DNA from: Mytilus trossulus
Taxonomy: Eukaryota
NCBI RefSeq assembly: GCF_036588685.1
Contig: NC_086386.1
Location: forward strand, 58,218,001-58,282,000
Direction: 5' to 3'
DNA: 64,000 nucleotides
Shown here: positions 11,358 through 60,842 of the stretch, piece by piece
Layout: every line of letters begins with the position of its first letter
How positions within the stretch are numbered: position 1 is the first letter of the stretch
Position numbers and translations under genes: made by a program
The notes under the pieces: generated by a model
Told to the model about the DNA's origin: nothing
Databases searched by the model: none
What the model saw: only the letters and a program-made list of their open reading frames with translations

Positions 11358-11787
11358 CATTTTGTTTATTTTCTTTGGTTACATCTTCTGACACCAGACT
11401 CGGACTTCTCTTGAACTGAATGCTAATGTGCGTATTATTATGCGTTAACTTTTCTTCATTGGTTAGAGATATAGGGGGAGAGTTGAGATCTCACAAACAT
11501 GTTTAACCCCGCCGCATTTTTGCGCCTGTCCCAAGTCAGGAGACTCTGGCCTTTGTAAGTCTTGTATTATTTTAATTTTAGTTTCTTGTGTAAAATTTGG
11601 AAATTAGTATGGCGTTCATTATCACTGGACTAGTATATATTTGTTATGGGGCCAGCTGAAGGACGTCTCCGGGTGCGGGAATTTCTCGCTACATTGAAGA
11701 CATGTTGGTGACCTTCTGCTGTTGTTTTTTTATTTGGTCGGGTTGTTGTCTCTTTGACACATTCACCATTTCCATTCTCAATTTTAT
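11358..11787 (+). mobile_element. Family A short element (3' end of the Naiad PLE)
   Basis: Colinear with 60648-60900 + 61417-61570; contains the twister fold. Confidence 0.85.
11461..11551 (+). ncRNA. Twister ribozyme-like fold (type P5), family A
   Basis: P2 CCCC/GGGG, P3 CGCA-TTTT-TGCG, P4 CCTG/CAGG with loop TCCCAAGT, P5 ggttagag/ctctggcc, T/AA site at 11504/11505. GAGAG instead of GAGGG weakens pseudoknot T1. Confidence 0.75.
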
Positions 11788-14514
11788 CAAATACTATTTC
11801 TTTAAATCTATTTTTCCTTAAGAAGAACAAGTATATAAATTGTCTGTTTAACATATTGTATGAAATAATTGATGAAATAGTATAACTATGTGGTATGTGC
11901 TTGACTCTCTGTTGAAGGCCGTATGGTGAATTATGGTTATTAATTTCTGTGTTATTTTGTCTCTTGTGAAGAGTTGTCTCATCGCCAATCATACCACATC
12001 TTCTTTTTTATATTGGTTGCATGCAGTAAAACTTTATTATCATATTGAACTCGTTTTTGTCCAGAAACTTATTGCTCAAATATGTTCTTCATATGATAAT
12101 AAATTATGAAAATGAACCATAGCAAACGCAAAAGATATTAGTTCTGTCTAAATACGTCTGTTCACATGTAGCTTACATTAAATAAATTTGCTTTACACGT
12201 AGTAAATATTTGTTATCATATGGAATTCGTTTTTTGTCCTGAAATGTATTGCTCAAACGTTTTCAAATATTTATAAAAAATATATATTCAGTCATTTATT
12301 GATATAAAAATTAATTTAAAAAAACGACATAATTTATATATTGCTCTGGTGGAAGTACGCCACTAATTCATGTTCCCATTACTTTCTATGTTATATTCCT
12401 CAATTTCAACCAGGCACACCTCTTTCATTTTAAGTTCAAATAAAGTGGCAATCATTGCATGTCAAACCAACACTTTATGGTGTCTTCTACTGATAAAATC
12501 AACATACCTTTAATCGCATATAAGAAAGAACTGGTTCCCGGAACTTTGGATGTACCAAAACAGGTACTTCAGATCTTACAAACAGACAAAATGTACCCTC
12601 TTTTTAAAATTTGGTGCAGTTTTTTTAATATTTAAAATTAAAAGTCCAAAAGTGTTCTACAATGATCACCAGTCCTTCAGCTTTCATTTGATGCCAAAAA
12701 TATCTAAACATCCTACATATTTTATAAGTTACTCTCATGCGTAGGAACTATTTTGCGTTAAATATGTACTACTTTCTGGTATGTGTTTTCTGGCGGGGCC
12801 CGAATTAGTGGTGTTACACCTGGTGACAAATTTATAACTTACAAGAAATAATTACAAAATACACTTGAGAAAATACTTCTTCATTCTGAAAATAAAACCT
12901 TAATAAAATTTCAACAACAAATCATTTATAAGTATCCAACTTTGCCAATCTTGTCGAATAAACACAACAGATAGAAGGGTTCCCGTGTAATCAGTTATGT
13001 AATTTGACACGTGTCGAACGGTTCAATCCACCATTTTCTACATTTGAAAATGCATGTACCAAGTCAGGAATATGACAGTTCTTGTCCATTGGTTTTTGAT
13101 GTGTGTTTCATTTGATTTTGCCACGTGATTATGGACTTTTCGATGGAATTTTCCTCTGAGTTCAGTATTTTTGTGATTTTTTTTTCATTGATTTTCGGCA
13201 CATATAAAAAACCAGACACGTGTCTAAATAATGTTGAATATCTGGTTTATTTATGATTATTTTTCTATAAAATTTGAATTTTTTTCCATTAAATATCAAT
13301 ATCTAACATTATATGGAAAGAAATTACAGCATCCCATCTAGTCCTTAGTGGCATGTTATATGGCCTTAGTGCACTAAGGACTCCTTAGCAGTGTTAAGAC
13401 GCACCCTGAACTTACAAGCCCGACAGGAAATCGCTTGAATACCTGGACGTGTCACCTCACACTACCTTTGGGAGTAATACCTTTAGCCATGCGGATGATC
13501 AGATAAGGGAAGGTCCGAATTTATTTAAATAAGTTGATTACATAAAAGAATTATGAACAAATTAGATTTTCGAAAACAATTTTCACGGAACACTTATTTA
13601 AGAGCATTTATGACTTTGAATTTTGACTTTTAAACTTATTCCTATATAAACAGTTTTAAAACGACAGACCACGGTTATTTAAAAATAATAACATTTCCGT
13701 ATCAAGTTAGTTAGTCGGATAAAACAACAGTACGATATCATTGACAAAATATCGACACTTCATTACGACTTCATTAGGTTACTGTTGTTTTGGTCCTTTG
13801 TGGTTTATAGACATATCGTGGCTTCTAATCGGAGGAGATGCCAAAACGGCGGCACGCAGAGAAATCTTTAATATTTATGAATTTGAGCAATTTTATACAG
13901 AATGGACATAATATCAATTCTTAATTTTTTTGCGAAGTTTCCCTTTAAGTTCGGATAAATTTTTCATGTTTAGTAAAAGATCCTTTAAACTTCTCATAGG
14001 TTGAGATATACCTGTTATTTTACAAGTAATGCAATCGAATACGTGTATTTTGTATGGAGTTTGAATTCGAAGTCATACAACTGATATATGTTAAATTGTA
14101 AATTAAACTAAATCGTTCTATTCATTTATTTTCTCGGTTGATCTGTATTCATGTCCTTGATTATATATATATATATATGCGTTTTACTAGTGTATCATGT
14201 GTATATGTTTTTTTTAAATTCAGTTTTGTCAACAGACAAGATGGCTTTTACTATCTGATACGAACCACTAAAACTGGTGATCTTTATGTTTTTGTTTCCT
14301 GTCGTTAATGTGGTAAACACATTACAGTTGATAACATTTCCGTGATCGTTCTCTGTTGCAATGATTTCCACTGTTATATTTGATTTTTATGCAAGGAATG
14401 CTGACATAACGTTACAATGTTCTAATTGTTAAATAAGTTTATCAGTTGAAAACCGTTTTTTTCGAATAAAGCAGTTAGTTATATATGTTTAATGAAGTTA
14501 ATGTTTATATCATG

Positions 14515-17200
14515 TAATGAGTGATTAAAGATACCAAACCTTTAAGTGAATGACCAGACCTCACGATTTGTCATCCAATCTCTTTAGAACTAATTGAAAA
14601 AATACTATTTTGAGCTAACAAAACACATAAAATATACAATTTTGCTTCTATATAACATACGTTATTATCAAATTTAATGTAGATATATAATAGCAACACA
14701 TTATTGGAAATTAAAATACAAATCAGTATAGTTTCATTTACGATATTAGTTATATATATTCATTTTTTTGTCGATGTTCTCGTGCTTATCTATTGTGTGT
14801 CAGTCTAAAAACCATTTCTCACTCTCCGTATTATATTTTGAAATTGAATGAGTATAACGTATATATAATTTGTAGATATATTTATTAAATGGATATACAT
14901 CTAACGTCTCAGCGGAAATACAACAAAACAGTTAGACTCTTATTATCAATACACGCAGATACAAAAGCACTTGTAGTTAATGTAATATTTTAGTATTTAA
15001 TAGTCTCAATTCGAAACACTATTGATCCTTCTTGCACATGATCTCTGATTAATTATTGTTTGGAGGAAGTACTTTGTGTGTTCAACAACATCAGCAATTG
15101 TTTAATCATAAATACAATCATTTGTGTCATTTATTATTATTGAATGTTCTCTTTATAACATATGATTATATATTATATATGTTTTTTTAATTTAATTTTA
15201 ATTTTAAATACATGTATACATAAACCCTTACTAATAAAGTTTAAACATGGATAAATATGATGTGTATTGCTTGTTTGTTGCACCAACATATACGAACATG
15301 TTTAATAACGCTTTTTATATCATGACATTTATCTGATAGACGTCAGTCGCATCTCACAGATTTGCATCATACTAAGCCAGATTAGAATTGAGCGGATTAT
15401 CTTAAGCTGGTATATTATAAGCATGTCATTTGCTCGCTCAGTTGTTTTCTATGTACTTTCATTGTGAATAGCAAAATATATGTGAAACCATTCTTTTTTT
15501 TGTAACTCATTGGCAGTCCGACTAAAATCATACACAACGACCTTAATCTTAATGTAGTTTTATATAATTGAAGTTCGTCTCTCATATTAAACCGATAATT
15601 CGTTATCAACATGTATATCTATGTTGAAAAAACAATCCAGAGTTTAGAGGTTTTACACACGTGTTTATGTCAAATGTATTCCTAGATCTTTAGAGTAGCT
15701 TATAAATTGATACTGCCTTATTGTACTGGGATCGGTTTGCAAATCACGGCACCAAAGGAAGTTTTTTTGTTTGCACTAAAACTGGCACTGCAAATTACAA
15801 AATTGAATCAGATACATCTTGAAATATTAATTTTTCTTTTCTGTTGGCTATCTTAATGTGAATGCAAAATATAAAACAATGTGGCTGACATGTCGTGTGG
15901 ATCCACTCATACGCCTTCTGTATTAGTTCTTTGAGATAATAATAAGAAAGTTCCTTATTGCTGTACATTTTATGAATACATAGATTTATATAAATTTGTA
16001 TTTTCACGACCTAAAGATGAAATTAATATAGAACCAATACATATATACCAAGAAGTAGTGCGATGTCTGTCTTTTTTGTATTCTGACTTTTGTAATTGAT
16101 CACAATCTCGATTGTATGTATCTAGAATTGAAAGACTTTTGTACATTTAAATACTGATAACATACTACAAATGTAATAATACTTTAACATTAATAAAAAT
16201 GTATATAAACGTAAAGTATCATTACACAAACCACAGTAAGCTGTGTCGATGCTATATAAAATTGGTCGGTTATTTGCACCTTACTTTATCTTAACATACT
16301 CATGAGTAATGTTTTTTTTTTTTATCTATTTGTCAATTCTTATCTTTGAATTCAAACATAATGAGAAAGAGATAGTAACCGATGATTCTTATATTAAACA
16401 AGTCGATTTCTTGTAAACCATGTGTTTATAAAGACCATACTAAAATTATCAACCTTAAACGTAATTATTTAGCCATGCATTGGGGCGAATTATATGCAAC
16501 ATCGTCTTTTTGATCAAGATAGCTTACATAACGACATTTTAATTGTCACGTCCTCGAATTGAATGCAATGCAGAACTACTTAAATACTATCAAAGCGTAA
16601 TGATCAGTCCTCTTTCTTCACGTCTTGACTGATTGCATGCTTATCGTAATGAATCACAGCCATGATTAAAAATTTCCCAGACTGATAGCTGCTTGCACTT
16701 TTATATGCTCATTTTTAAGTACAAATGTGATCTTTATACACTTGATATTGAAATATAGCAAGATTAAATGATGTCATGTATGAACATACACACCCAGTTG
16801 ATTCATTGAAATGAATTATGTATAAATATGTAAAAATGAGGTCAACTCTTTCATAAATTTGTGTAATTATGCCATGTTGCGTTCGTAATATATTTCATTG
16901 CTACAATGTGTGCATGTAAAATAGCACAACATATATGTTGCTGTGCTGCTATTCAATGCGACTACGAACAAAACATAATATGTGACATACTAGTTTAGGG
17001 CAATGCAATATTTGTTGTTTGTCAATTGAACCAACTCAAAATTGAATCCTTTTTATTTTTAAAATCATAAACATCTTTGTTGATCTTATATGAGTGTGCA
17101 TAAGCAATATTTGACCACCAATCGTAAAATAAATATTCAGAATTGTATAGAGTTTCCTTATCACATTTTGTATTTAAATGTCACACCCTGTTTTGAATTT
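14515..17200. repeat. Second copy of the ~2.7 kb duplication
   Basis: Same orientation and block order as 3690-6405. Confidence 0.95.
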
Positions 17201-18427: not shown

Positions 18428-18811
18428 GGATGTACTTAGGTGAGGTTAGGTAAAATTTAAGAAATTAAGAAATTAAAATTGATACTATAAGCTGGTAGAT
18501 CTTCAATTAACGACAAAAATAAGCTGAACATATTGGAAGGTCATGGACCTCCTTTTCGAGATATTTGAGATTTAAAATATGGCGGGAAAAGGCTGACTCT
18601 TACTTTCACCTTATATTTGCATTGGTATTCTTAGGGTCTCAAAACAAAAGAAAGAAAATCAAGAATCTTCTAAAATTCATGAGCTATTAAATCTTATATG
18701 AAAAAATAAATGGGTGTTAAGGGGCAAAATATTTTACATTGTATTGTATGGAAAAACACCAAGGAGTTCGAACATTTGACACAAATTCCAGAACCTCACC
18801 TAAGTACATCC
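18428..18811. mobile_element. TTAA-type MITE, 384 bp
   Basis: Perfect 20-bp TIR ggatgtacttaggtgaggtt / aacctcacctaagtacatcc; flanks ttga / ttaa. Confidence 0.85.
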
Positions 18812-19328
18812 TTAAAAGAGATGTGAAATTGAGTCTGATTTCATTTGTCACATGCATGCATACGTTTATTCATTGGTTATTGCCTCAGCATGTCCTTTAA
18901 TCAGACCCCCAGCCGAGCTAAGTCAAATAAATTGCCATGTTTTATCAATTCTAGGATTTTCGAAAGGGTTTACACATTTTAAACCCCAAATAATGCATAT
19001 ACGCGTAAAAAAATCTGATTTTGAAGGGGAGTGCACTACCGCATTATATTCTTGGATTTTTCTGCGTACTTCTGTACGGAAAAGTGACAGTTTGTTCCTT
19101 TTTTAACATGATCCTTGTCAAATTATTGTTGTGTTCATTTGTCCTTTGAGTACTTGATTACTTCAGCCAGTTGTATAAGTAAGATAAAGTTGTTGCATGA
19201 TAACAATCACCTAAGTTTATCGCTCAGATCAACGCTAGATAAATGACAAGACGTCGGTACTTACTTATAGGCTGATTTGGTGCCTTTCCTGAATGTCTCG
19301 GAGAGTAAATGTAACAACAAACATGTCA

Positions 19329-29134: not shown

Positions 29135-29376
29135 GACAAAATCAAGTTATTTCAATTTTTCTTAAAGTGTCCAGTACAAAGTCAGGAAAATTACCATTGC
29201 TATATAAAAGTTCGATTCTGTGTGTGTGTTGCATTTTAATGTTGTGTTTCTGTTGTGTCGTATTTCTCCTCTTATATCTTATGTGTTTCCCTCAGTTTTA
29301 TTGTGTAACCCGGGCTTGTTTTTTTCTCAATCGATTGATACATTCCGAACAGCGATATACTACTGTTGCCTTATTT
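29135..29376 (+). mobile_element. Family D short element nested in a family B copy; fragments at 28402-28497 (-), 39361-39473 (-), ~9500-9700 (+)
   Basis: Shared gtgtttccctcagtttta...gaacagcg.tatactactgttgcctt; decayed aagtcagga twister-like core at ~29170-29190 and ~9640-9690. Confidence 0.65.
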
Positions 29377-33657: not shown

Positions 33658-34078
33658 TAAAATTGAGAATGGAAATAGGGAGTGTGTCAAAGAGACATCA
33701 ACCCGACCATAAAAAAAAACAACAGCAGAAAGTCACCAACAGGTCTTCAATGTGGCGAGAAATTCCCGCACCCAGAGGCGTCCTTCAGCTGGCTCCTAAA
33801 CAAATATATGCTAGTTCAGTGATAATGAACGCCATACTAATTTCCAAATTGTACATAAGGAACTAAAATTAAAATAATACAAGAATAACAAAGGCCAGAG
33901 GCTTCCGACTTGGGACCTCTAGCCAATGTAGAAAAGTAAACGCATAACAATACACACATTTCAATTCAGTTGACGAGAAGTCTGAGTCTGATGTCAGAAG
34001 ATGTAACCAAAGAAAATAAACAAAAAGACAATAATATATATATAACAACAGACTACTTGGAGCTAACTGACATGCCAG
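33658..34078 (-). mobile_element. Family A short element with twister core deleted
   Basis: Reverse complement of family A; reads ggctagagg-tcccaagtcggaagcctctggcc, lacking ~55-60 nt. Confidence 0.85.
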
Positions 34079-37000: not shown

Positions 37001-37219
37001 GAATGCAGTTACTATTACTGAACCGTGAGGGCATATTGCCGTATTTCTAATTGTTAGAAACTTACATTTATATACGAATAGGCTATTTGCCAATTCCGGT
37101 AATTGACCCTTTTATTAGAGATCCCTATAAAAGTTTTCTCCCTTTTGAGGGACTCTAATTTTTATATGAAGCATATATGCATTGTATTGCAACTGTTATA
37201 GAAAAGGGACATTGCATTG

Positions 37220-37692
37220 CATTCAGATATCGCAGATCAATTTTATTAGTTTATTGTGTTTTATTTACGTTTTTTTTTTAATTGAGTTAAGTCGACCAAT
37301 TGATATTTTATCATGTATTTTTCTATTTTGTGATGTTATGCTATTATATCAGAAAAAGGGAGAAAGTTTGGATCCATTAAACGTTTAATCCCGCTGCAAA
37401 TGTTTTCACCTGTCCTTAGTCAGGAATCTGATGTACATTAGTTGTCGTTTTTATTATGTAATATATATGTGTTTCTCGTCTCTCGTTTATGTATATAGAT
37501 TAGACAGTTGGTTTTCCCGTTTGAATGGTTTTACACTAGTAATTTTGGGGCTCTTTATAGCTTGTTGATCGGTGTGAGCCAAGGCTCCGTGTAGAAGGCC
37601 GCACATTGACCTATAATGGTTTACTTTTTTTAAATTGTTATTTGGATGGAGAGTTGTCTCATTGGCACTCACACCACATCTTCCTATATCTA
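37220..37692 (+). mobile_element. Family B short retro-element (twister-bearing); 3' fragments at 11889-12012 (+), 27163-27412 (-), 28962-29460 (+, interrupted), 36400-36612 (+)
   Basis: Shared tagattagac.gttggttttccc...gctccgtgt(t)gaaggcc...gagagttgtctcattggcactca.accacatctt. Confidence 0.75.
37345..37435 (+). ncRNA. Twister ribozyme-like fold (type P5), family B
   Basis: P5 tatatcaga/tctgatgta, P2 TCCC/GGGA, GC, P3 tgcaaa..ttttca, P4 CCTG/CAGG with loop TCCTTAGT, T/AA at 37386/37387. Confidence 0.65.
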
Positions 37693-37819
37693 TTGATCTA
37701 TCATTATTTTACAATAAAAATCTAAAATACAGCAGTTTTACTTTAGGAGTTGTACTTATCAGGTTATTTGCCGAACTTTCAATTTCACCTTGCATTTTGA
37801 AAACTAATTCAGCGTGTCT

Positions 37820-38495: not shown

Positions 38496-38812
38496 AACAA
38501 GTAAAATCACAAAAATACTGAACTCAGAGGAAAATCAATTTGGAAAGTCCATAATCACATGGCAAAATCAAAAAACAAAACGCATCAAAAACGAATGGAC
38601 AAGAACTGTCATATTCCTGACTTGGTACAGGCATTTTCAAATGTAGAAAATGGTGGATTAAACCTGGTTCTAAAGCGCTAACCCTCTCACTTTAATAACA
38701 GTCTCATCAAATTCCGCTTTATTTACATGATGCGTTAAATAAACAGTCACAATTAATAAAATAGTCAAAATATGGGTACACCAGTCATCATCGTATAACA
38801 ATTTTAAAAGGA
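38496..38812 (-). mobile_element. Family C short retro-element (twister-bearing); other copies 13025-13185 (+), ~53950-54150 (-)
   Basis: Shared aatccaccattttctacatttgaaaatgc.tgtaccaagtcaggaatatgacagtt...ttcctctgagttcagtatttttgtgatttt. Confidence 0.8.
38605..38702 (-). ncRNA. Twister ribozyme-like fold (type P5), family C
   Basis: Minus strand: actgttat-taaa-GTGA-GAGGG-ttagcgct..aaccaggtt-T/AA-TCC-AC-CATTTTC/GAAAATG-CCTG-TACCAAGT-CAGG-A-at-atgacagt. Confidence 0.65.
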
Positions 38813-40667
38813 ATACAGTTTATTTATGGAAAAACATACCGAAATCCTATGTATCCTTAATCGTTTATTTTCTTATATGGTGTAATAAATAAAATCGGAC
38901 AGGAGCTGATATATGAAATTTGTTTTTTAAACAAGATCCAGATATTTAAAGTTCAATAAGAAAAGGAAATCGTTGCTTTGCTATTGTCTTATTATATGGG
39001 TAATTGTTATTGCCGATATGCATTTTTTTCCATCTAATGAAGGAAATGGACATTGATTATGCGTTAATTTATAATCAAAATATAATATAAATCGGTTAAA
39101 GTTCTGGAGTTGTACTCATTTGGACATTGACCACCTGTTGGTAATTACGTTAATCTTGTTTTAGACCAATGTTTGCATGTACTTAGTTTAGTCATTGTCT
39201 TAATGTTGACGATATATGTTTATGAGATCATTTGTTATTTTACCAGCATTTAAAAATTTGATATACAGAATCCAGCACTCTCACGCAAATAAAAATGTAT
39301 TTTTGTTTCAGGATATTCAACAATAAGATATACCTGTATTTTCACTCACTTCTATGTCTGAAATAAAGGCAACAGTCGTATACCGCTGTTCGAAATTCAC
39401 AAATCGATTGAGAGAAAAAAACAACCCGGGTTTCAAACTAAAACTGAGGGAAACACATCAAATATAAGAGAAGATGTAAATAAAATGTATGCATGTTGTG
39501 TTTTCAAATCATGTATTGGACATTTATAAGATATGTAGTTACTTATTTGACAAATATAATCATAGCTTCGAATGCTCAGACAATATGATGGTCGTCTTAA
39601 ATTCAAATGAACGGATTATGAAATGCATGTATCGTTATTTTGTTTATACCGGATTGGTCAGAAATATGATGAATTAAGAAGATATATATAGAAAGATATG
39701 TTGACCATGTTTACACTTCCTGGTATAAGTAATTATGGAGTCGAGACAATTCCACCAGGATAGGTTCCTTAAAAATTTGCATCTTTAAAATTAATTTACT
39801 AGTGTTGAACAAATGAAAACTACAATTGCCTTAATAAGATTGATGGTATATCTGACGAAACTTCACCAAATATATTGTAAAAGTATATTTTTAAATCCCT
39901 TTTGATAATGTTTGTGTCATTTTTATCTTTGTTTTATGTTAAAAATCAATCTTTGAAATATGAATTTCTTGATGGTTTCTCCAGGGAAAGCTACCGTGTT
40001 TCAAAGATAATTACTATCTTCTGTTGATATTTTTTCCTGATATGTGATTTTTTAGAATTTAAAATACCCCTTTTAATTCTTCAAAGCAAATGGAATACAA
40101 CTAAACTATATTTGTCATAAAGATCGCCCATTTACGTAAGTGGGTAAACAAAGGCCTCTTTTGGAGATTACAAATTACTTCAAATGAAGTAAATGACAGA
40201 TCCAACATTTGCAAAATTGACTACGGAGACAATTTAAAAATTAAAAATACCCGTTTTGATTTCAAATTCAATTTACATCAATCTCCAAAAGTGATACATA
40301 TTGCAGATTCCGGTTAATAAAATTCAAATGAGATAATTAAGATTATTTTCAATATACCTTTCTTCATTGAGTAAATGTGTACGCTTTTTGAATTTAAAAG
40401 TTTGTTCAAATCAAACCGGTGACATCTTTGCGTAATTTAGAGAAAATGGTTGGTATATCTGCATTAATATGTGTTCTGATCCGTTTCTTAGTTTAGAGCT
40501 ATCTAACATTTTGTATTTGGCAATCCCTTTTCTGCCATTTTGAATTTTGATAGCATTAAGTTTTGAATTTTAACAGCGTTTATTTTTATGGTATTGGTAG
40601 CATCAAATGATGAATATTGATATTATTATGATTTGGAAAATTGTAAAAATCATTTTGTTTCAGATCT

Positions 40668-43760: not shown

Positions 43761-43965
43761 AAACTAAGGATTTTCTTATCCCAGGTATAGATTACCTTAG
43801 ACGTATTTGGCACAACTTTTTGGAATTTTGGATCCTCAATGCTCTTCAACTTTGTACTTGTTTGGGTTTATAAATATTTTTGATTTGAGCGTCACTGATG
43901 AGTCTTATGTAGAGAAAACGCGCGTCTGGCGTACTAAATTATAATCCTGGTACCTTTGATAACTA
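43761..43965 (+). mobile_element. 5'-truncated hammerhead retrozyme copy
   Basis: gcgtca-CTGATGA-gtcttatgtaga-gaaaa-cgcgcGTC-tggcgt at 43889-43932; ttgta on both sides (possible TSD). Confidence 0.8.
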
Positions 43966-48086: not shown

Positions 48087-48390
48087 GTAGTCAGTACTGT
48101 TTGTGCTGACATGAATTGTCATTGATATGGTTATGTTTATAAATTTACTGTTTACAATTTTTTGATTTTTTTGAAATACTAAGGCTTTTCTACCTCAGGC
48201 ATATATTAGCTAGGCTGTATTTGGCAACACTTTTGTGAATTTTGGTTCTCAATGCCCTTCAACTTCGTACTTAATTTGGCATTTTTAACTTCTTTGGATT
48301 CGAGCGTCATTGATGAGTCTTTTGTAGACGAAACGCGCGTCTGGCGTATGTATACTAAATTTAGTCCTGGTATCAATGATAAGTTTGTTT
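48087..48390 (+). mobile_element. Hammerhead retrozyme copy nested in a TTAA MITE
   Basis: Core 48304-48347 gcgtca-tTGATGA-gtct-tttgt-agac-GAAA-cgcgc-GTC-tggcgt (single C>T in CUGAUGA). Flanked by aatgtaaaa/aatgcaaaa, a putative TSD. Confidence 0.85.
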
Positions 48391-51345: not shown

Positions 51346-51695
51346 AGTTATGCGTTTACTTTTCAACATTGGCCAGAGGTAAAGGGGAGGGTTGAGATGT
51401 TATAAACATGATTAACCCCACCACAATTGTGAGTTGTCCCAAGTCAGGAGCCGCTGGCCTATGTTAGTCTTGTATGATTTTTGATTTTAGTTGCTTGTGT
51501 ATAATTCGGAGTTTAGTGTGACGTCCATTATCACTGTACTAGTAAACATATTTTAAGGGGCCAGCTGAAGAACGCCTACGAGCGCGGGCGTTTCTCTCTA
51601 CATTGAAGATCCTTTGGTGGCTTTCGGCTGTTGTCTGATCTATAGTCGGGTTGTTGCCGCTTTGACACATTCACCATTTTCTTTCTCAATTTTAT
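51346..51695 (+). mobile_element. Family A short element (diverged)
   Basis: ttatgcgtttacttttc...ggggccagctgaag...gttgttgccgctttgacacattcacc...tctcaatttta. Confidence 0.8.
51371..51459 (+). ncRNA. Twister ribozyme-like fold, family A variant (P4 damaged)
   Basis: ggccagaggt...GGGGAGGG...TAACCCC-AC-cacaattgtg-agttg-TCCCAAGT-CAGG-A-gccgctggcc; alternative P3 hairpin and AC/GT pseudoknot pair. Confidence 0.6.
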
Positions 51696-52950: not shown

Positions 52951-55900
52951 AATAAAAAGTACAAACTATGTGAAGATCAATATACATTATTTGATTTTGA
53001 TTTTTTTAAGATTATAAACATGTTGATATTTAATGTAATATCATGGGTTAGAAATATTTGTATATACGATGTCTGCACAAACAATGTTTTATTTGTACAA
53101 TTGCATTTACACAAACTCGCTCCAAAGTTATGTCCATGCGATAAATCTTATAAAATCTTTTTTTTTTTAATTCATTCTATAAATTCACTAGTATTTCTTA
53201 TGTGTATTATACAAACATACATGTAGTCAGTATGGATGAATTCAAAACTTGGTGAAGTTCTTAAATTTTATTGCTTAAATATGTGTTTATGCTCATGATT
53301 GAATTATTCCTCAGCGTAGAACACAAACATGTGTCTATAACTAAAACTTGAACAATGATATATTCAGAATATTACAGTTATATTGCTTCATATAGCATTG
53401 GTGTCAAAGCAGACCATGTCAATTTTATATAAAAGGTATTTGTAAAAATAGTTGATATGTAATAATACATCAATAGGAAAACTGATTTAAACAACACTTT
53501 GTTAAATGAAGGCACACGCGGGAGTTGTGGTTTACAAATTACATGAACGCATATTGGTTATTTAATATTGAGCAGTCATGGATAGGGACTGATATAACTA
53601 TAAACTTGTTTAAAGATAAAACTACATTATTTTTACACATAAGACTTGCTATTGTGCTTAAGTGTGTGTAATATAGTTCATTACTAATAATGTTTAAGTT
53701 CATCAAAATATATCAAGCGAAAAAAAATATAGTTGAGCTAGCATTGATGTATGTGCTTTTACTGTAATCGGTATATATTCTATTGAAACTGTTGGAGGAC
53801 ATGAATATTGCTTAACCATTATCTAACTATTAAAATCAAGTATACAATAATTTTACAACTGTATTTATCGTTATCAAAAAATCAAACGTGCATCGGTAAC
53901 GAATTTTATATAGTTAGATTAACAATTTTCTAAGAACTTATAAAAAGAGAAGTAAAAAAAAAAGAAAAATTCCTAGAAGAATTCTGCATGGAAAGTTTAT
54001 AAGCAAATGGCAAATGACAAAATTAGAGACTAAAAAACATCAATCGAACTGATAACAACTTTCATATTCCGGACTTGGTACAGGCATTTAGAAAATGGTG
54101 GAATAAAACTGGGTTTACACTTAGCTAAACATTTTACTTGTATGTCAATAGCCTTCTGAAACGAGGTATGTTTTAAGTGCCGGAACTACTTTTTCATTAA
54201 CCGAGAAATTATTTTAACTAAAAACATTTCTCTAAAAAAAACCTGATATATACTACTAAAACAATCAACAACATACAATACTCTGAAACGCCATCTTTGC
54301 AAAATAATGTAAGGGTTTTCAATATTATCAATCAAATCATCTTTTTTACAAATATGTAATGACATTTTAAGAGTATCATGCCATTTCAATGTACTCTCAG
54401 TAACTTTGAAACACAGATTGTAATCATAAGGTCTGTTTTTTTTCGTAATATCTAAAAATGTATTGAATATTAAGATCCAAGACGACATATTCGTTGCATG
54501 TGTCGTCTTACATTTTAAGATCATGTATGATCGTTACATATGTGGACATATATAATGATGCAAATATAAATAAAACAAGACAAGACAATGCTCGCCAATC
54601 ACACTACTCAATACATTCACGTAATTCCGTCATGAGTCTCTCATGATTTTCATATTAAAAATCAGTTTACCACAATCTATGAAATGAACAGCTACATGTT
54701 GAACCTATCATTGATTTGTTCTCCCAAATGATCTGTTGAAATCAATAATGATAAAACCACTGTCATTGGTGGCATCGAATTTCATTATGTTATTAAAAGT
54801 CTATCCTTGAAATATGAACATCTTGATGTTGTTTTCAGGCAACACTTTACTGTCTCAAAGATAATTGCTACATTCAGTTGAAATATTTTTTTTTTAAATG
54901 AGATCTGTAGAATATAAAACAAAAATTTCATTTATGTATAGCAAACGGAATAAAACTGTACTATATTGGTCATTAAGCAGTCGATTTACGCAATTCGGTA
55001 CATACATGCTTCACATGTAGATAATTTTTTTTTTTTTTTAAATTAAGTTAAATGTTAATTAAGTAACACGGGGACAAGTTGCAAAAAAAAAATATTACAT
55101 GTACCCCGGTTCTATTGAAAGTAAATGAGTCTAGACTATTATAAAAACTGTAGCGAGTACAGTTTCATTTAAGGTAAATAAAAGAATCTACTATTAATAC
55201 TTACCTCCTAGAGCACGCGCGTTTACATTATCTTCAGGTTTTATCCTCGCATTTGCGATATGTTATTTCGAACGTATAATGAAAGGTCTCGTAGTTGAGG
55301 TCAGAACATACGGAAAGAAACTGACGAATAAGAGTCTGGCAGGCCAATGACTTAATGATGGTACATTATGAATACTTTGATGAATTAAAAAAAAGGATTT
55401 TTGTTTAAAACGAGGTTACGTTTACTTTAGTTGAGTTAAATTTAGCTATTCGATTATGTGAACAATACTAAAAAAAAAAAATAATTTAAGTTTAATATCA
55501 CTTTAAAATGTATATCACAATTCAAATTATGTCCTTGAATTGCACTTTTGTGTCCTAAAGGTATCTACTATGTACCTCTTTCTATATTACATCCATGTAT
55601 ATATCTATCTATATTCCCTTTTAACAAATATTTTCCCACAACATCTTTTTGTCAGTTACTAACTAGGAAAACTATGTTAATCGATACATAATTGAAATAC
55701 AGTCCGTCAAAATAAATGAACAAATTATGACAATCCCCATATCGAAAAAAAAGAATACACGTAAAAACTATAATGCAATAAACTTAGGTTTGTTCACAAT
55801 GGTCTAACAAATGTAATCCTTGATCAGTGTTTTTTTCTTCTTTTCTCCAGTTTGTTTTTAACTATATTCTTATATTCTGTTTCTTATATAGAAAATAGAA

Positions 55901-58900
55901 TTAAACTCTTTACAAAAGTGTTGTACATTCAAATGTACCAGGTGTAAGGAAACAACTGTTACACATTCGATCAAGATTAACACAGTTCAATATTTTATAA
56001 TTTACAACTTTACTATACATTACAATATCGTGTTGGAAAGTTGCAAGGTGAAAATGACCTGTTTTGGAAAAAAGGGGGTAAGTGTCCGATTTTCTTTATT
56101 TCTTTTGTTCGAGAAGTAGCCGTTCGACATATCTAAAGAACATTTTCTTGGTAATTAAGAATAGCCTTTGATGATATATAAAAGCAATAAATAAAATTGT
56201 TATTAACGTGCACTAGAAGTTTTCTAATTAGTAGATAAACCGTTCGAAAACCCTTAACAGCATATAAGTTAGATTCTTTAAGATTAAAAATAAAAATGAA
56301 TTTTATTGGTAGCTTAATGCATGATGAATACAGACAAGCAAAACATAGACATTAAAAACAAAGGATGAAGACATTTTTGGAATTATATGACAAAAAGAAG
56401 CCTATAAATTCAAACCAAATTCATCATATGTAAGTTTCACTAAAGTCAGTAAATACGTACATAATGACAACAATAATCAATTATTTCTGTTTTTTCCATA
56501 CTTTTCAAGTTGAAGAAAACTTGCCTCCTATAACGTCTATTTATCGTATAATATATGCATTGCTATAATCATGATGTTTTAAAAATTTGAGATACAATTT
56601 TTCTCTGAACTATTCTGCTAGTTGTAAACTTTAAGAAGAAGAATTATGATAGAAGTTATCACTCTAAGTAACGCATTTGTCTCGATTTTGAAAAATTAAA
56701 ATTATGATGTTTTCGCCGATTTTTAAATTTGCGATATAATTTTACTCGAATATTAATTACAGCATCAGATGATAAGTATGCATTTCACATCATTGTGTTA
56801 ACTTAACCATTATAGCAAAAGATATCGTATACGTACAAATACGTCAAATTAGTATATTGACTCATTTGGAAATGTTTCGATTTATCCAAAGTATATACGA
56901 TCAGATCAGAAACGGTAAAGGTGTAGCTAACATTTTATTAAACAAAATATTCACTTTTACAATTTACTGAATGATAATTCCTTTATAGATGGATCTTCAT
57001 TATTTAGTTTTTATAAATGCGGCAAACGAGCCAATACGAGACTCTGATATTTGTGAGCAGGAATATGATACCGTTTTAACAAATGTATTAGTAATATCAA
57101 AAGCAGCAATGTGTGATCCCCACAACATGCAAAATGATGTTAAAAGTCTTTTAATTTGTTAAACAAACGCTTCGTTTTATATAAAAAAAAAATCAACATA
57201 ATCTTAAAATGGCATGTAAGTCCGAAATGCCTCCTAAAACCAAAATATGCACTGTTAAACAAAATAAAGATTTATTTTTATGGGAAAATATATCAAGCAC
57301 TTGAAGCCGATTTACGATATAAATCTATTTCATGCACCATATTGTTTGAAAATTCTAATGTTACAAATAAACAGCTTTATCTAATAAGCTTCCTAAATTG
57401 ATTGTTGATTGACAATATGACAGAAAAGAATCAATCAAGACTTAAAATCTTACAATGTATATTTATAAGGATTTCCTTCAACGAGATTTTCATAATAATT
57501 GTTTATTCAATAATAACATACTACGGTTCAAGAATACTAAGTGTTATAGTGTCTGAATGATGTACATTTACGTGTTGGTTACATATTGGTAAAATGGAAA
57601 ACCGACATATAAACGTGATATATATGATAAATTTATAGTGTGTATTGTAGAGAAAGAAATAGTTTAATGATTGTATTTGTTATTTAATATTTTGAGGAGT
57701 AATTAATTTAATTAAGAAAACGTATTGAGCATTATTGAATACTGTGCGAAATAGAAGCATACGATTTGATTTGTTATCTTTGTTATACGTTACTCTAAAT
57801 AAGGCATTACACAATATAACTTCACACGATATTCCCCCCCCCCCCTCTTTTTCCCCCGACTTTTCGTTAATGGCTGTTGATTTTAGCAAATTATATATTT
57901 TCAAACACAGAAACGAAACAAAGAAAAAATAACTTTCATTTACTACACACATCACATTCGTGTTTACACTCACTTTCAGATACTTTATCGGTATAATTGT
58001 TAGTATTTATAACTCAGTATGACGTGTTGATTTCTTACTTCTTTTTTCTTCAATTTGTTCATCTTAAAGAAATGCGTCCTTCAAGGTTTCACCAACCATA
58101 CCCAATATTTCCAATCGCCATTACTTAAAAACAACTTAAAAGTTCTAAATGTATAGATGTCAATGATTTTTTCATGAAAATATAACAAGAAACAAACATA
58201 AATAAAATGCAAGATGTTGATCGATTTTTTGTAGATTATATTGTAGACATACAGTTTCAAGCTGCATGCCGTCGTGTCATATGTTATCGCACGTCATAGG
58301 GTTGTGCACGTCATATATTGTAGTATGTCAAATTTTATCATACGTCACATATGCATGATGTTTTTGTATCATCCATATTTCGTCAGGTTCAATTATACAC
58401 ACCTACAATGTGACGTGGCTTCCTGTTACTTTTTTTAGAAAGTCAATAACACAGAATGTGATACATATAAAACATGTTGAAAGTCGCTTTTTAAAGATAA
58501 AAATTAACAATTACTTAACTTATCTGTTGAGCCATTTTGTAATATAAAGGATTGCATTCCTAGCAAATTAATTTGATTTGATCAGAAATTCGCAGTAAAC
58601 TTTGATGAATAAATTATTGCACATCAAAACAATCTTCAGAAGACGCTTCAAATGTTCCAGCTTTAATATGACTGATCAACGGTTGTAGAAGATACTATTT
58701 AAAAGTGTAATTTTAACAAAAAGACGAGACTACTATAGTGTTGCGTATTTTTATCACAATTGCAACATGTGTTAGAATAAGAGATATTAGTTGTATGTTT
58801 AACATGTTTAAGTTAATCTGTAAATCAGTTCATTATGGGTCTACAATATATCTTAATAGAAACATGAAAACGTATACGACTAATGGAGCTGTATACGGTA

Positions 58901-59129
58901 CATGTATATTTTGGTTGTCTATATTATATCAATCCTATTTATTAGAAACAAAGAAATATACTCTGATTTGTCATGTTTTTTCTTCCGCTCATTGCCCTTA
59001 CTGTATTCTTCTCCCTCGACTCATGAGTTGTGATATGGTTTCTGGTATGTAACCACTCTGAACAATTGTACACGTTAGCCGTTAATAGAATGGATACATT
59101 TTGTGAGGTTGCTAACATATATGACCGGA

Positions 59130-60441
59130 CAATAAACTTGTATCTACCGCTTTACAAGCAGAAACAAAAACATTGAAAGTACCAAATATGTATTGGCTTT
59201 CGAGACTACATAAAACAACTTACAAATATAGATTTATTTCCTCATCAAGCCATTGTTCCACTACTAACTTATCTATTATTCGTACCAGTACACTTGGTAC
59301 AATCAAAAACCTGATAACAAAATGTTCAAACAAGGCCTTCGAATACAATGGAATTAGTTAATTTGGAGTTTCAAGAACTCGTTGGAAGTATTTTATAAAT
59401 GGCATGCATATATTAGGGATTTTGAATCTGTTCAAAGTATTGATTTTTCTAACCTTTATACCACATTGCCTCATATTCTCATAAAGAAAAATTCACACAC
59501 CTAATTAGATGCGCATTTAAAAAGTCAGAATGTGAATATATATGTTCAAATTCTTTAAGGTCATTTTAAGTAGCAATAAGCAAAAAAAACTATGTTAATT
59601 AGACATGCTTTGATACTATATCTGCCCTTGGATTGTTACTAGATAATATTTTTCGGATATCCGGATATCGTCAGGTTATCGGAATTTTTATAGGGACTAA
59701 CTGTGCACCACTTATTGCGGACCTGTTTTTGTATTGCTATGAGTTACAATTTATGACAAAAATCAGCAAAGCCCCATCGAAACAACATCTGATACACAAA
59801 TTTAATCATACTTTCCGATATTGGATGATCATTTGACTCTCAATAGTTCCGACTTTGGTATGTATACTAAGAAATGTGCCCTGTTTAACTTACTTTAAAT
59901 AAAGCTAAAACTAACAATGACCACTGCCCTTTCCACGATCTTGATATCTGTATCATTAACGGAAAGCTTCATACTAAAATTTATGATAAAAGACATAATT
60001 TCTCATTTCCTATCGTTAATTATCCATTTTTAGATAGTGACTTTCTCTTGTCACCATTTACGGTGTTTATATATTTCAACTTGTACGATTCGCTCGTATA
60101 TGTAACAATGTTTTAGATTTGTAAAAATATTACACCAGAGTTTTCGATATCACAAACTAGTCAAACAAATTACTAAATGTTATCATCGGTATAAGAACAT
60201 CATTCGTAAATATAGCTCAACCTGCAGACTTCTAAAAGGTTCAGGTACTTCACATCCAATATTTTATGGACATATTCTTTTAAAAGCACAAAAATATTAG
60301 TATTCACCTAAGAGGCTAAAACAACCTTTAAATAGACTTATTAAGAAGGGATATAGTTACGGTACTGTAGTCAGAACATTAAAGATTGTATATTTTGGCG
60401 TTAGTATTGATTTACTTATAGGGTCTTTGCATCGGAACTAA
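59130..60441 (+). pseudogene. 5'-truncated, frameshifted reverse transcriptase of a Penelope-like element (Naiad/Chlamys-type)
   Basis: Fragments across frameshifts: VPNMYWLSRLHKTTYKYRFISSSSHCSTT; LYTTLPH; YRQVIGIFIGTNCAPLIADLFLYCYE; FRY(L)DD; CPFHDLDI; TKIYDKRHNFSFPIVNYPFLDSD..YGVYIFQLVRFARIC; ends SLHRN-TAA at 60441. No C-terminal GIY-YIG, consistent with the permuted (N-terminal EN) clade. Confidence 0.9.
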
Positions 60442-60490
60442 ACACATTTATTTAAAAACCAGTTGTTGGCATGACACGGGTTATTTTCCT

Positions 60491-60560
60491 ATCATGCATG
60501 TTATGATGGTATAATACTGAACCCTTCACGGAAGGATCGTGCCTGACATTCATATGATGA
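60491..60560 (+). promoter_or_regulatory. SECIS-like (type II) stem-loop in retroelement 3' UTR, slightly decayed
   Basis: ATGA(60503)-TGGTATAATACT-GAA-apical ministem-AGGATCGTGCC-TGAC(60547). GA/GA core, GGTATAAT/ATCGTGCC helix, apical AA, and lower helix atcatgcatg/catatgat; ~60 nt after the RT stop. Confidence 0.65.
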
Positions 60561-60751
60561 AGACATACTCTTTCAATCAGTTTAATTGAAGTCACGAGCC
60601 GGCAAGTCAGTTAACTGCTAGTAGTCTTTTTTAATTATATATTATTGGCATTTTGTTTATTTTCTTTGGTTGCTTCTTCTGACATCAGAATCGGTCTTCT
60701 CTTAAACTGAAGTTCAATGTGCGTATTGTTATACGTTTACGTTTCTGCATT

Positions 60752-60842
60752 AGTAAGAGGTATAGGGGGAGGGTTGAGATCTCATAAACATGTTTAACCC
60801 CGCCGCATTTTTGGGCCTGTCCCAAAGCAGGTGCCTCTAGCC
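60752..60842 (+). ncRNA. Twister ribozyme-like fold (type P5), family A, inside the Naiad 3' UTR
   Basis: agaggt-ata-GGGG-GAGGG...T/AA-CCCC-GC-cgcatttttggg-CCTG-TCCCAAAG-CAGG-t-gcctct. Predicted cleavage 60795/60796; loop 4 and P3 mutated in this copy. Confidence 0.65.

What the first reader, a model, noticed from the sequence alone, without database searches (positions are those of the whole stretch)
11461..60842. Twister ribozymes shared by a Penelope-like retroelement and several unrelated short repeat families ('twister retrozymes')
Seen: families A (11461-11551, 51371-51459, 60752-60842), B (37345-37435) and C (38605-38702 minus, 13025-13080, ~54055-54150 minus), plus decayed D copies, share little sequence yet all read P5-P2'-GA-T1'-...-U/AA-P2-(GC|AC)-P3-CCTG-T(C/A)C(C/T)(A/T)AGT-CAGG-A-P5'. 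Stems co-vary between families: P2 CCCC/GGGG vs TCCC/GGGA; P3 CGCA/TGCG vs CATTTTC/GAAAATG vs CACA/TGTG; each family has a different P5. Established: this is the twister consensus (cf. the rice twister UAACACUGCC..CCGGUCCCAAGCCCGGA..AGUGGAGGG, from memory) in the P5 permutation. Penelope-like pseudo-LTRs and animal retrozymes are normally described with hammerheads. Inference: a twister-based processing system used by a Naiad PLE and its non-autonomous parasites; I cannot confirm it is unreported.
Basis: partly seen in the sequence, partly recalled or inferred. Interest (0 to 1): 0.92.

Follow-up and report, generated by a model that had tools for sequence, protein, structure and literature searches.

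The report
Twister ribozymes in Naiad retroelement tails
The 3' untranslated tails of at least three Naiad-type Penelope-like retrotransposon families in this bivalve-like genome carry a circularly permuted (type-P5) twister self-cleaving-ribozyme motif, which matters because Naiads were described as the Penelope-like clade that lacks a ribozyme.

Summary
In detail: all named sites exist at the stated coordinates. They read as type-P5 twister motifs.

Rfam alone does not call them. The best result is Twister-P5 at 23.1 bits against a cut-off of 37.6, on a less mutated genomic copy.

The case rests on structure. In 13 copies from about 11 lineages, 91% of cells in P2, P3, P4 and both pseudoknots pair, against 66% after partner shuffling (0/2000). 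Compensatory changes occur in T1, T2, P2, P3 and P4, and each lineage has its own P5.

The interpretation needs correcting. Families A, B and C are not unrelated short repeats or retrozymes. They are 5'-truncated 3' ends of three divergent Naiad families: N-terminal GIY-YIG, C-terminal reverse transcriptase, DKA motif.

The same motif lies downstream of the reverse transcriptase in 7 of 9 marine-metagenome Naiad contigs with close RTs, and in 3 of 23 with distant ones.

P1 is replaced by two covarying palindromes, which suggests dimerisation.

Cleavage is not shown. One RNA-seq run gave no end pile-up, and genomic 5' ends do not cluster at the site.

No paper in the searched library links twister to Naiads or molluscs.

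The parts
11357..11787 (+). 5'-truncated copy of the Naiad-A 3' UTR (431 bp). It has the fixed 3' end ...CTCAATTTTAT.
   Evidence: 95-96% identical to the 40 best-scoring genomic copies (over 5,400 first-look candidates). Sharp 3' end and variable 5' ends.
11461..11551 (+). Type-P5 twister motif A1. Order: P5 (5' strand), UAUA, P2' GGGG, GA, T1', two palindromes, U/AA (11504/11505), P2 CCCC, GC, P3, P4-L4-P4', A, P5 (3' strand). It has private mutations at 11481 (T1') and 11543 (P5).
   Evidence: R1 97.9 bits. Reads from other copies show G at 11481 and C at 11543. The intact relative L016:1605-1695 scores 23.1 bits on Rfam Twister-P5.
37213..37693 (+). 5'-truncated copy of the Naiad-B 3' UTR (about 480 bp).
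   Evidence: 89-90% identical to the 40 best-scoring genomic copies (about 4,900 first-look candidates). Other copies have a Naiad RT 66-73% identical to Naiad-A upstream on the same strand. The near-complete element is in L095.
37352..37435 (+). Twister motif B. P5 UCAGA/UCUGA, P2' GGGA / P2 UCCC, scissile bond 37386/37387. The family form has T1' AGG / T1 CCU; the window copy has AAG and CCUU.
   Evidence: R1 77.8 bits. Family form in L043 and L095.
38496..38813 (-). 5'-truncated copy of the Naiad-C 3' end (318 bp).
   Evidence: 97-98% identical to the 40 best-scoring genomic copies (about 1,600 first-look candidates). Upstream tandem units of about 260 nt. RT C-terminus, UTR and C are colinear in L072 and L114.
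38605..38702 (-). Twister motif C, a variant. It has an 8-bp P5, UAAA linker, P2' GUGA, GA, T1' GGG (GGU in relatives) against T1 ACC, U/AA (38660/38659), a short and imperfect P2 UCC, L2 AC pairing with GU of L4, and a 7-bp P3.
   Evidence: R1 68.3 bits. Rfam twister-P1 20.1 bits, from the P3-P4 part only. Parse.
13020..13185 (+). Naiad-C copy truncated 5 nt upstream of the predicted scissile bond. It holds only the 3' two-thirds of the twister.
   Evidence: Reads of full copies continue upstream of 13020 (table 7).
51347..51694 (+). Older A-like copy (82% identity). Its twister A2 at 51371-51459 is decayed: P4 is broken and the G of GAGGG is lost. It retains the ACC form of L2 and a CACA/UGUG P3.
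   Evidence: 69.6 bits.
59152..60285 (+). Decayed Naiad reverse-transcriptase fragments with stops and frameshifts.
   Evidence: tblastn with the 399-aa open frame of L036 gives 55-76% identity in pieces. ORF pieces carry DFSNLYTTLPH and GTNCAPLIADLFL.
60649..61569 (+). 3' UTR of that decayed Naiad copy, interrupted by about 500 bp. Twister A3 at 60752-60842 has L4 mutated (CCCAAAGC).
   Evidence: 88.8 bits.
54058..54149 (-). Decayed C-like twister copy.
   Evidence: R1 48.6 bits; sequence.
9601..9696 (+).
   Evidence: R1 32.4 bits; sequence.
29171..29187 (+).
   Evidence: 3 mismatches to the core. Not found by R1 at E<=1.
33658..33916 (-). Naiad-A copy truncated 23 nt downstream of the scissile bond. 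It lacks the 5' half of the twister.

Best explanation
The motif is a type-P5 (circularly permuted) twister-class RNA. It is built into the 3' untranslated region of Naiad-type Penelope-like retrotransposons, in sense orientation. It lies about 100-850 nt after the reverse-transcriptase coding region and about 240-300 nt before the element's fixed 3' end.

What is shown:
- The motif, its helices and both pseudoknots are conserved through compensatory changes across Naiad lineages whose RTs are only 38-90% identical.
- The window's families A, B and C are 5'-truncated 3' ends of three such lineages.

What is inferred:
- The RNA self-cleaves between N(-1) (U or C) and the first A of the AA in L1, for example U11504/A11505. 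The catalytic guanine would be the invariant G of the AAG in L4.
- The ribozyme would do for Naiads what the hammerhead is thought to do for other Penelope-like elements. That is, it would cut unit-length RNA out of read-through or partial-tandem (pseudo-LTR) transcripts, leaving 5'-OH and 2',3'-cyclic phosphate ends that could be ligated.
- P1 is absent. In its place are two palindromes that covary as palindromes. They most likely pair between two ribozyme copies, so that cleavage depends on two copies being present.
For: Twister identity:
- Rfam Twister-P5 aligns over its whole length (positions 1-58) to L016:1618-1684 at 23.1 bits, E 0.0036 for the 141 nt searched. It matches P2' GGGG, GAGGG, a 21-nt insert, UAA, P2, GC and P4/L4 GUCCCAAGUC.
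- The count of structure pairs on 12 sequences gives 92.1% paired cells against 84.5% shuffled (0/500) and 29-46% when partners are slid. Six pairs have changes on both sides, including two of the three T1 pairs and all three counted P3 pairs.
- A curated parse of 13 copies gives 201/221 cells paired against 146.9 +/- 4.7 (0/2000).
- T1 plus T2 give 61/65 against 47.0 +/- 2.6 (0/5000).
- T1 states are CCC/GGG, CCU/AGG, ACC/GGU, UCU/AGA and CGA/UCG. T2 states are GC/GC, GC/GU, AC/GU and CC/GG.
- P5 is 5-16 bp with unrelated sequences in each lineage.

Naiad identity:
- L036 holds a 399-aa open RT frame upstream of the A UTR.
- Full-length homologues are 850-1100 aa, with N-terminal GIY-YIG and C-terminal RT and the PADKA motif.
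- B and C sit downstream of other Naiad RTs.

Independent loci: model R1 found new copies on the sense strand downstream of the RT in metagenome contigs L098, L102/L103, L104, L109, L117 and L163. In L101 the copy lies about 2.5 kb upstream of the RT. Twisters are present in 7/9 loci with RT >=50% identical and in 3/23 at 30-49%.

Palindromes.

Literature: Naiads 'lack canonical HHR' (PMC8557442). Penelope-like-element hammerheads have a palindromic stem III loop and act as dimers (PMC6765202). Twister can cleave, inefficiently, without P1 (PMC8501958).
Against: - No Rfam twister model reaches its gathering score: 23.1 against 37.6 bits for P5 and 20.1 against 67.2 for P1. There are no hits at all in whole-window or multi-locus scans.
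- No canonical P1 exists.
- The C-type and the L101/L102/L104/L109 type have an internal P2 mismatch. Three of those four, and the window's C copy, also have a mismatch at the third T1 pair.
- L4 ends in GU or GG rather than the usual GC in most lineages.
- One raw RNA-seq run, of which about 6% was read, covers both strands about equally. It shows no pile-up of molecule ends and no dip in depth at 11504/11505.
- The 5' ends of about 35 incidental genomic copies are spread along the element and do not cluster at the scissile bond.
- Most distant Naiad-like loci have no detectable twister or any Rfam ribozyme, so the module is not needed by all Naiads.
- The lineages are few and related, so the shuffle statistics overstate independence.
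Confidence: 0.75

Rival explanations
1. The element is a twister-fold RNA that no longer cleaves, or cleaves negligibly. It would be kept because the compact double-pseudoknot fold in the 3' UTR is what the Naiad reverse transcriptase (or a host factor) recognises to start target-primed reverse transcription or to package the RNA.
For: - It lies in the 3' UTR, about 240-300 nt from the fixed 3' end that every truncated copy keeps.
- P1 is missing and P2 is weakened in several lineages.
- No cleavage signal appears in RNA reads or in the 5' ends of copies.
- Rfam scores are below the cut-off.
Against: - Positions that matter for catalysis rather than for the fold alone are invariant in all 13 parsed copies. 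These are the AA after the scissile bond, the GA before T1', and the AAG of L4 with its T2 C-G pair.
- That invariance is partly circular: my parser required those letters.
- A pure protein-binding fold would not be expected to keep them.
- Truncated copies lacking the 5' half of the motif were still inserted, so an intact fold is not needed in cis for insertion.
Confidence: 0.15
2. The ribozyme is an independent passenger. It would be a small ribozyme-bearing non-autonomous element (retrozyme-like) that has repeatedly inserted into, or been captured by, Naiad tails, and that uses Naiads for its own spread rather than serving them.
For: - The literature raises the same idea for hammerheads in Penelope-like elements ('if HHRs simply parasitize PLEs', PMC8557442).
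- The motif is patchy among distant Naiads, at 3/23.
- The genome holds very many copies without any coding part.
Against: - The coding-free copies have the variable 5' ends and constant 3' end of ordinary 5' truncation.
- No unit flanked by two ribozymes and no back-joined RNA was seen.
- The position relative to the RT is nearly constant (+479 to +494 nt) in five contigs whose RTs are only 51-90% identical to the Naiad-A query. That fits vertical descent with the element.
Confidence: 0.07
3. The resemblance is chance: a conserved repeat core that happens to look like twister.
For: Rfam finds nothing at its curated thresholds. A loose descriptor of my own gives many false hits in AU-rich sequence: 31 control hits.
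Against: - Every conserved twister loop nucleotide is present, in the right order and spacing.
- Five helices and two pseudoknots are kept by compensatory changes.
- The model recovers new copies only on the sense strand next to Naiad RTs.
Confidence: 0.02

Closest known systems
Twister ribozyme, type-P5 permutation (Rfam RF02684, clan CL00120; Roth et al. 2014, cited from my own knowledge and via PMC8501958 and PMC10085705)
   Same: - Same order of elements: P5, P2', GA, T1', (P1), N/AA, P2, GC, (P3), P4-L4-P4', P5'.
- Same conserved loop nucleotides and the same two pseudoknots.
- Full-length alignment to the model.
   Different: - The score is below the gathering cut-off.
- P1 is replaced by two palindromes separated from each other by 1-5 nt.
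- T2 is mostly G-U, A-U or C-G at its first pair instead of G-C.
- P3 is always present and often long.
- The host is an animal retrotransposon tail.
Hammerhead ribozymes in the pseudo-LTRs of canonical Penelope-like elements (Cervera and de la Pena 2014; dimers: Lunse et al. 2017, as summarised in PMC6765202)
   Same: - A small self-cleaving-ribozyme motif in sense orientation near the 3' end / pseudo-LTR of a Penelope-like element.
- A palindromic element where the terminal helix should close, which suggests action as a dimer of two copies.
   Different: It is a different ribozyme class, in the clade (Naiad) reported to lack hammerheads (PMC8557442). The window's own hammerheads (6784, 48304) belong to another repeat family.
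Twister 'T-variants' at the 5' end of Perere-3/RTE non-LTR retrotransposons of Schistosoma mansoni (PMC8501958; also 'in preparation' note in PMC7761336)
   Same: A twister-class motif used by a retrotransposon, with P1 relaxed or missing.
   Different: - Those are type-P1 and sit at the very 5' end. Copies there start at the AA of the cleavage site, with the target-site duplication forming P1.
- Here the motif is type-P5, internal to the 3' UTR, and copies do not start at the site.
Metazoan retrozymes (PMC7229834; bioRxiv 10.64898/2026.07.22.740005)
   Same: Abundant non-coding repeat copies that carry a ribozyme and derive from Penelope-like elements; mussels are a known host.
   Different: Retrozymes are short tandem units, each with a hammerhead, expressed as circular RNA. 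Here the copies are dispersed 5'-truncated element tails with one twister each, and no circle signal was found.
Naiad Penelope-like elements, including selenoprotein-encoding ones of clams (PMC8557442)
   Same: - N-terminal GIY-YIG, C-terminal RT and the DKA motif.
- Length about 4.4 kb (L095).
- In-frame UGA codons with a SECIS-like element just after the stop.
- Very high copy number in a bivalve-like genome.
   Different: That paper searched only for hammerheads and reports none. A twister in the 3' UTR is not mentioned there.

Membership tests
Twister ribozyme (type P5) | Conserved loop nucleotides: N/AA in L1, GC-type L2, GA + GGG-type strand, and U-NNN-AA-G-Y in L4. | tested here: met
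   L016, L093 and L094 read GGGG GA GGG ... U/AA CCCC GC(C) ... CCUG U CCC AA GU CAGG. GA, AA and AAG are found in all 13 parsed copies, although the parser required them.
Twister ribozyme (type P5) | Helices P2 and P4, plus optional P3 and P5, supported by covariation. | tested here: met
   Paired cells: P2.1 13/13 with 5 pair types, P3 50/52, P4 49/52. P5 is 5-16 bp with unrelated sequences. P2.3 is mismatched in 7/13.
Twister ribozyme (type P5) | Double pseudoknot: T1 (L4 with the strand after GA) and T2 (L4 with L2). | tested here: met
   61/65 cells paired against 47.0 +/- 2.6 shuffled (0/5000). There are 5 T1 states and 4 T2 states, and the tool count agrees. The partner assignment comes from my knowledge of the crystal structures; it was not read from a paper here.
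Twister ribozyme (type P5) | P1 helix closing next to the scissile bond. | tested here: not met
   The strand after T1' and the strand before N(-1) are not complementary. Two separate palindromes sit there instead. P1 is reported to be dispensable for weak cleavage (PMC8501958).
Twister ribozyme (type P5) | Score at or above Rfam's gathering cut-off. | tested here: not met
   23.1 against 37.6 bits. No hit in larger scans. The model scores neither the pseudoknots nor P3 and P5.
Twister ribozyme (type P5) | Site-specific self-cleavage giving 5'-OH and 2',3'-cyclic phosphate. | tested here: inconclusive
   No end pile-up at 11504/11505 in one RNA-seq run, of which 6% was read on a multi-copy target. 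No clustering of genomic 5' ends. Biochemistry cannot be tested with these tools.
Naiad clade of Penelope-like elements | N-terminal GIY-YIG endonuclease, C-terminal RT, and DKA instead of DKG. | tested here: met
   This was shown for relatives of the RT next to family A. Pfam GIY-YIG falls at residues about 20-200 of 855-1105-aa homologues, with the RT match at their C-terminus. PADKA appears in the alignment consensus. The window's own copy holds only decayed RT pieces.
Naiad clade of Penelope-like elements | No canonical hammerhead; 5' truncation and partial tandems / tails. | tested here: met
   No hammerhead was found in the Naiad loci. 5' ends are variable with a fixed 3' end. A 58-nt upstream tail is present in L095.
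Metazoan retrozyme | Short tandem units each carrying a ribozyme; unit-length circular RNA. | tested here: not met
   The tandem units of about 260 nt in family C lack the ribozyme core. A and B copies are dispersed. No supported back-joint appears in RNA reads.
5'-terminal retrotransposon twister (Perere-3/RTE type) | The ribozyme sits at the element's 5' end, and copies begin at the AA of the cleavage site. | tested here: not met
   The motif is 859 nt (A), 868 nt (B) and 384 nt (C) into the reference stretches used, which all start inside the element. Copy starts range from -224 to +247 around the site with no peak.

The most novel reading that the evidence does not exclude
Naiad twisters are the first obligately dimeric twister ribozymes. 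The two covarying palindromes that replace P1 would pair between two copies, either in two RNAs or in the two pseudo-LTR copies of one partial-tandem transcript. Cleavage would then happen only where two copies meet. It would release unit-length (possibly circularisable) template RNA, a convergent solution to the one used by dimeric hammerheads in other Penelope-like elements.
Probability: 0.3. Interest if true: 0.85.

Novelty: new variant of a known kind. Interest (0 to 1): 0.8.

Why it matters
Penelope-like elements are known for carrying hammerhead ribozymes. The Naiad/Chlamys clade dominates bivalve genomes and was singled out as lacking them. This led to the suggestion that ribozymes are dispensable passengers (PMC8557442).

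If a large Naiad subclade carries a twister at the equivalent place, three things follow:
- The rule 'Penelope-like elements need a self-cleaving RNA' may hold after all, with a swap of ribozyme class. The question becomes testable with natural sequences.
- The known biology of twisters widens. The result adds a third retrotransposon context, a type-P5 form in animals, hundreds of thousands of rough candidate copies in one genome, and a P1-less form with palindromes.
- It shows why curated covariance models miss these copies.

Tried and rejected
- **Rfam scans.** The gathering scan and the E-value scan of the whole window gave no twister hit.
- **Genome-wide Rfam Twister-P5.** Only 79 of 26,711 candidates were scored, so this was uninformative.
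- **Type-P1 reading of family C.** The Rfam alignment leaves P2 and T1' unpaired. I rejected it in favour of the P5 reading.
- **Comparing copy numbers either side of the scissile bond.** I tried to use first-look candidate counts, but the upstream query returned 0 because common words are skipped. The comparison is unusable.
- **5'-end pile-up at the scissile bond.** Not seen, with n of about 35.
- **RNA reads.** No support for cleavage and none for circles. In the contig-based depths all post-site bins are about 2-14 times the two pre-site bins. I judged this unreliable, because the raw reads show only about 1.5-fold.
- **P5 cross-lineage control.** It allowed G-U pairs and was not clean: cross-lineage mean 6.0 bp against 8.8 for own partners. 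I therefore rest P5 on its position at the junction, not on that statistic.
- **My loose descriptor.** It gives about as many hits on control strands as on the sense strand. Only G/C-rich hits downstream of the RT were accepted.
- **A simple two-molecule model with both palindrome duplexes stacked coaxially.** This is topologically strained, because the spacer is only 1-5 nt. The geometry of any dimer is left open.
- As a result, animal genomes other than this one could not be sampled, and genome-wide copy statistics could not be made.
- **Sequence-string search in papers.** It found only unrelated primers.
- **One paper search** was badly framed and wasted.
- **Consensus sequences.** Only column majorities of the roughly 120-nt non-coding motif were inspected.

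Full report
**1. Observation.**
The sites are real.
- The core CCTGTCCCAAGTCAGGA, with up to 3 mismatches, occurs 8 times in the window against 0 in shuffles.
- A covariance model built later (R1) finds the same places, plus one more decayed copy at 9601-9696.
- The window is G000:C14:58218001-58282000 of a 1.3-Gb genome in 541 contigs. The repeat content and type-I hammerhead repeats fit a bivalve. Organism names were coded in the read tools, so I do not name a species.

**2. What the repeats are.**
All three families have a constant 3' end and variable 5' ends. The window copies are 5'-truncated: other copies continue upstream with conserved sequence.

*Family A.*
- Long copies of family A run into a reverse-transcriptase frame.
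- L036:3-1199 is a 399-aa open stretch.
- Its relatives among 1.84 billion proteins include many of 850-1100 aa in which the match is C-terminal.
- Seven of eight full-length homologues tested match Pfam GIY-YIG near the N-terminus, four of them above its cut-off.
- The alignment consensus has PADKA.
- N-terminal endonuclease, C-terminal RT and DKA are the diagnostic features of Naiads in Craig et al. 2021 (PMC8557442).

*Family B.*
- It lies downstream of a second Naiad RT that is 66-73% identical.
- A near-complete element of about 4.4 kb is in metagenome contig L095.

*Family C.*
- It looked non-autonomous at first, because its 5' part is a tandemly repeated unit of about 260 nt.
- However, in L072 an RT C-terminus, a UTR and C are contiguous and colinear with metagenome contig L114, whose RT is about 40% identical.
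- A C-type motif also follows an uninterrupted ORF of about 1,000 aa in L122.

So the 'unrelated short repeat families' are tails of three divergent Naiad families. The window also holds one decayed Naiad body at 59152-61569.

**3. Is it a twister?**
*Rfam.*
- At its own thresholds Rfam says no.
- On the small candidate loci, only C hit twister-P1, at 20.1 bits, through its P3-P4 part.
- The window's A1 copy carries two private mutations.
- On the less mutated copy L016, Twister-P5 aligns end to end at 23.1 bits (cut-off 37.6; E 0.0036 for the 141 nt searched).
- That alignment matches P2' GGGG, GAGGG, a 21-nt insert where the model has about 20, UAA, P2, GC and P4/L4.
- Reads and contigs of other copies confirm G at 11481 and C at 11543, which restore T1' and P5.
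- The Rfam models score neither the pseudoknots nor P3 and P5, which here carry much of the signal.

*Structure, 12-sequence alignment.*
- 92.1% of cells pair, against 84.5% in shuffles (0/500) and 29-46% when partners are slid.
- Six pairs change on both sides. These include two of the three T1 pairs and all three counted P3 pairs.
- The first T2 pair alternates between G-U and A-U.

*New copies.* I fetched 80 marine-metagenome contigs that encode relatives of the Naiad RT. R1 recovered copies that were not in its training set, all on the sense strand:
- downstream of the RT in L098, L102/L103, L104, L109, L117 and L163, plus L114, which is cut by the contig end;
- about 2.5 kb upstream of the RT in L101, which looks like the tail of a preceding copy.

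*Structure, curated parse of 13 copies from about 11 lineages.*
- 201/221 cells pair, against 146.9 +/- 4.7 after shuffling partners (0/2000).
- T1 plus T2 alone give 61/65, against 47.0 +/- 2.6 (0/5000).
- T1 appears as CCC/GGG, CCU/AGG, ACC/GGU, UCU/AGA and CGA/UCG.
- T2 appears as GC/GC, GC/GU, AC/GU and CC/GG.
- P4 switches between CCUG/CAGG, ACUG/CAGU, ACCG/CGGU and CGG/CCG.
- P5 has a different sequence in every lineage, yet forms 5-16 bp at the junction.

*Folding.* Minimum-free-energy folds recover P5, P3 and P4 in all lineages tested.

*Weak points.*
- P2 has an internal mismatch in the C-type and in the L101/L102/L104/L109 type.
- The window's C copy and three of the L101/L102/L104/L109 group have a mismatch at the third T1 pair.
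- The lineages are few and related, so the shuffle counts are not probabilities.

**4. P1 and the palindromes.**
- The strand after T1' and the strand before the scissile bond are not complementary, so there is no P1.
- Instead, every copy has a perfect 6-10-nt palindrome 0-2 nt after T1'. Examples are UGAGAUCUCA, UGGGAUCCCA, GGGGCCCC, UGUGCGCACA and GGGUACCC.
- In 11 of 13 copies a second palindrome ends at or next to N(-1). Examples are AAACAUGUUU, AACUAGUU, AACCGGUU and AAGUCAGACUU.
- Shuffles reach such a terminal palindrome in 2.6% of trials.
- The palindromes differ between lineages but stay palindromic, including their central bases. Several have a single central base.
- Both facts argue against hairpins and for pairing between two copies.
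- RNAcofold favours homodimers by 8-17 kcal/mol.
- This parallels the palindromic stem III loop and dimeric action of hammerheads in Penelope-like elements (PMC6765202).
- The idea is an inference. A simple coaxial two-molecule model is strained, so I leave the geometry open.

**5. Does it cleave?**
Cleavage is not shown.
- One raw RNA-seq run covers the repeats on both strands about equally.
- It shows no pile-up of molecule ends and no dip at 11504/11505.
- This is weak evidence. Only 6% of the run was read. Thousands of dead copies contribute read-through signal. Ordinary libraries also capture such ends poorly.
- The 5' ends of about 35 incidental genomic copies do not cluster at the site.
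- The window's C copy at 13020 starts 5 nt upstream of the site, not at it.

**6. Scope.**
- In this genome all 150 model hits that were scored reach at least 92 bits, out of about 582,000 rough first-look candidates.
- Among metagenome loci with at least 600 nt after the RT match, 7 of 9 with RT >=50% identical carry the motif. Five of these have it at +479 to +494 nt; the other two are at +639 and +839.
- Only 3 of 23 at 30-49% identity carry it, plus L163, which has a shorter flank.
- The negatives have no Rfam ribozyme and no R1 hit with filters off.
- The module therefore marks a Naiad subclade and a few other lineages, not all Naiads.
- The close group has only UGA as in-frame stops, and a sub-threshold SECIS_1 match right after the terminal stop. 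This matches the selenoprotein Naiads of clams (PMC8557442).

**7. Comparison with what is known, and novelty.**
- Twister permutations P1, P3 and P5 are known (PMC10085705).
- Twisters at the 5' end of Perere-3/RTE elements are known (PMC8501958; PMC7761336).
- Hammerheads in Penelope-like elements and retrozymes are known (PMC6765202, PMC7229834, bioRxiv 10.64898/2026.07.22.740005).
- Craig et al. state that Naiads lack canonical hammerheads. Their paper does not contain the word twister.
- No paper in the library holds 'twister' together with 'Naiad'.
- None links twister ribozymes with molluscs beyond reviews.
- The original twister survey (Roth et al. 2014) is not held, so I cannot exclude that single mollusc hits were listed there.
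- I rate this a new variant of a known kind.

- Because of this, cross-species evidence rests on unnamed metagenome contigs.

Noticed in passing
window 6698-6828, 43806-43933, 48219-48348 (+): A separate repeat family carries a type-I hammerhead. Rfam Hammerhead_1 scores 28.3 bits at 48304-48347 and 20.3 bits at 6784-6827, both below the 34-bit cut-off. The copy at 43867-43933 has GAAAAC in place of CGAAAC. It looks like the known mussel-type hammerhead repeats and is unrelated to the twister families.
   Followed up: partly
L093:617-3040, L095:788-3484, L102:509-3208; SECIS-like at L093:3095-3159, L102:3207-3269, L094:1913-1977, L109:3318-3385, L104:2319-2380: In three near-complete Naiad ORFs (L093, L095, L102) the only in-frame stops are one or two TGA codons, and the ORF ends in TAA or TAG. 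A SECIS_1 match of 26.6-30.9 bits (cut-off 35) lies within about 55 nt downstream of the L093 stop and overlaps the L102 stop; similar matches occur in L094, L104 and L109. This suggests selenocysteine-encoding Naiads, as described for clams. The 3' UTR order would be stop, SECIS, twister, 3' end.
   Followed up: partly
L092 (G000:C8:78626500-78633000): This is a tandem array with a period of about 1181 bp. Each unit holds the RT-coding part of Naiad-A (about residues 68-391 of the L036 frame) but not the twister-bearing tail.
   Followed up: partly
L079:1271-1512 and its repeats in L072, L081, L084, L091: The 3' UTR of Naiad-C contains a unit of about 260 nt that is tandemly repeated one to three times upstream of the twister. 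The copy number differs between insertions.
   Followed up: no
window 11787->11357 joint in run X15 contigs: Contigs of a DNA-like run join the 3' end of family A to position 11357, with TG between. This is a head-to-tail arrangement of a truncated copy behind a complete tail, as expected for the partial tandems of Penelope-like elements (table 5c).
   Followed up: no
L122:4751-4858 (-): A decayed A-like twister copy lies in inverted orientation about 1.3 kb downstream of the C-type twister of the same contig. It fits the inverted truncated copies described for Penelope-like insertions.
   Followed up: no
3' ends of A (window 11740-11787) and B (window 37650-37693): The last roughly 45 nt of A and B share a GTTGTCTC(T/A)TTG(A/G)CAC motif, although the UTRs are otherwise unalignable outside the twister. 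This may be the part the reverse transcriptase recognises.
   Followed up: no
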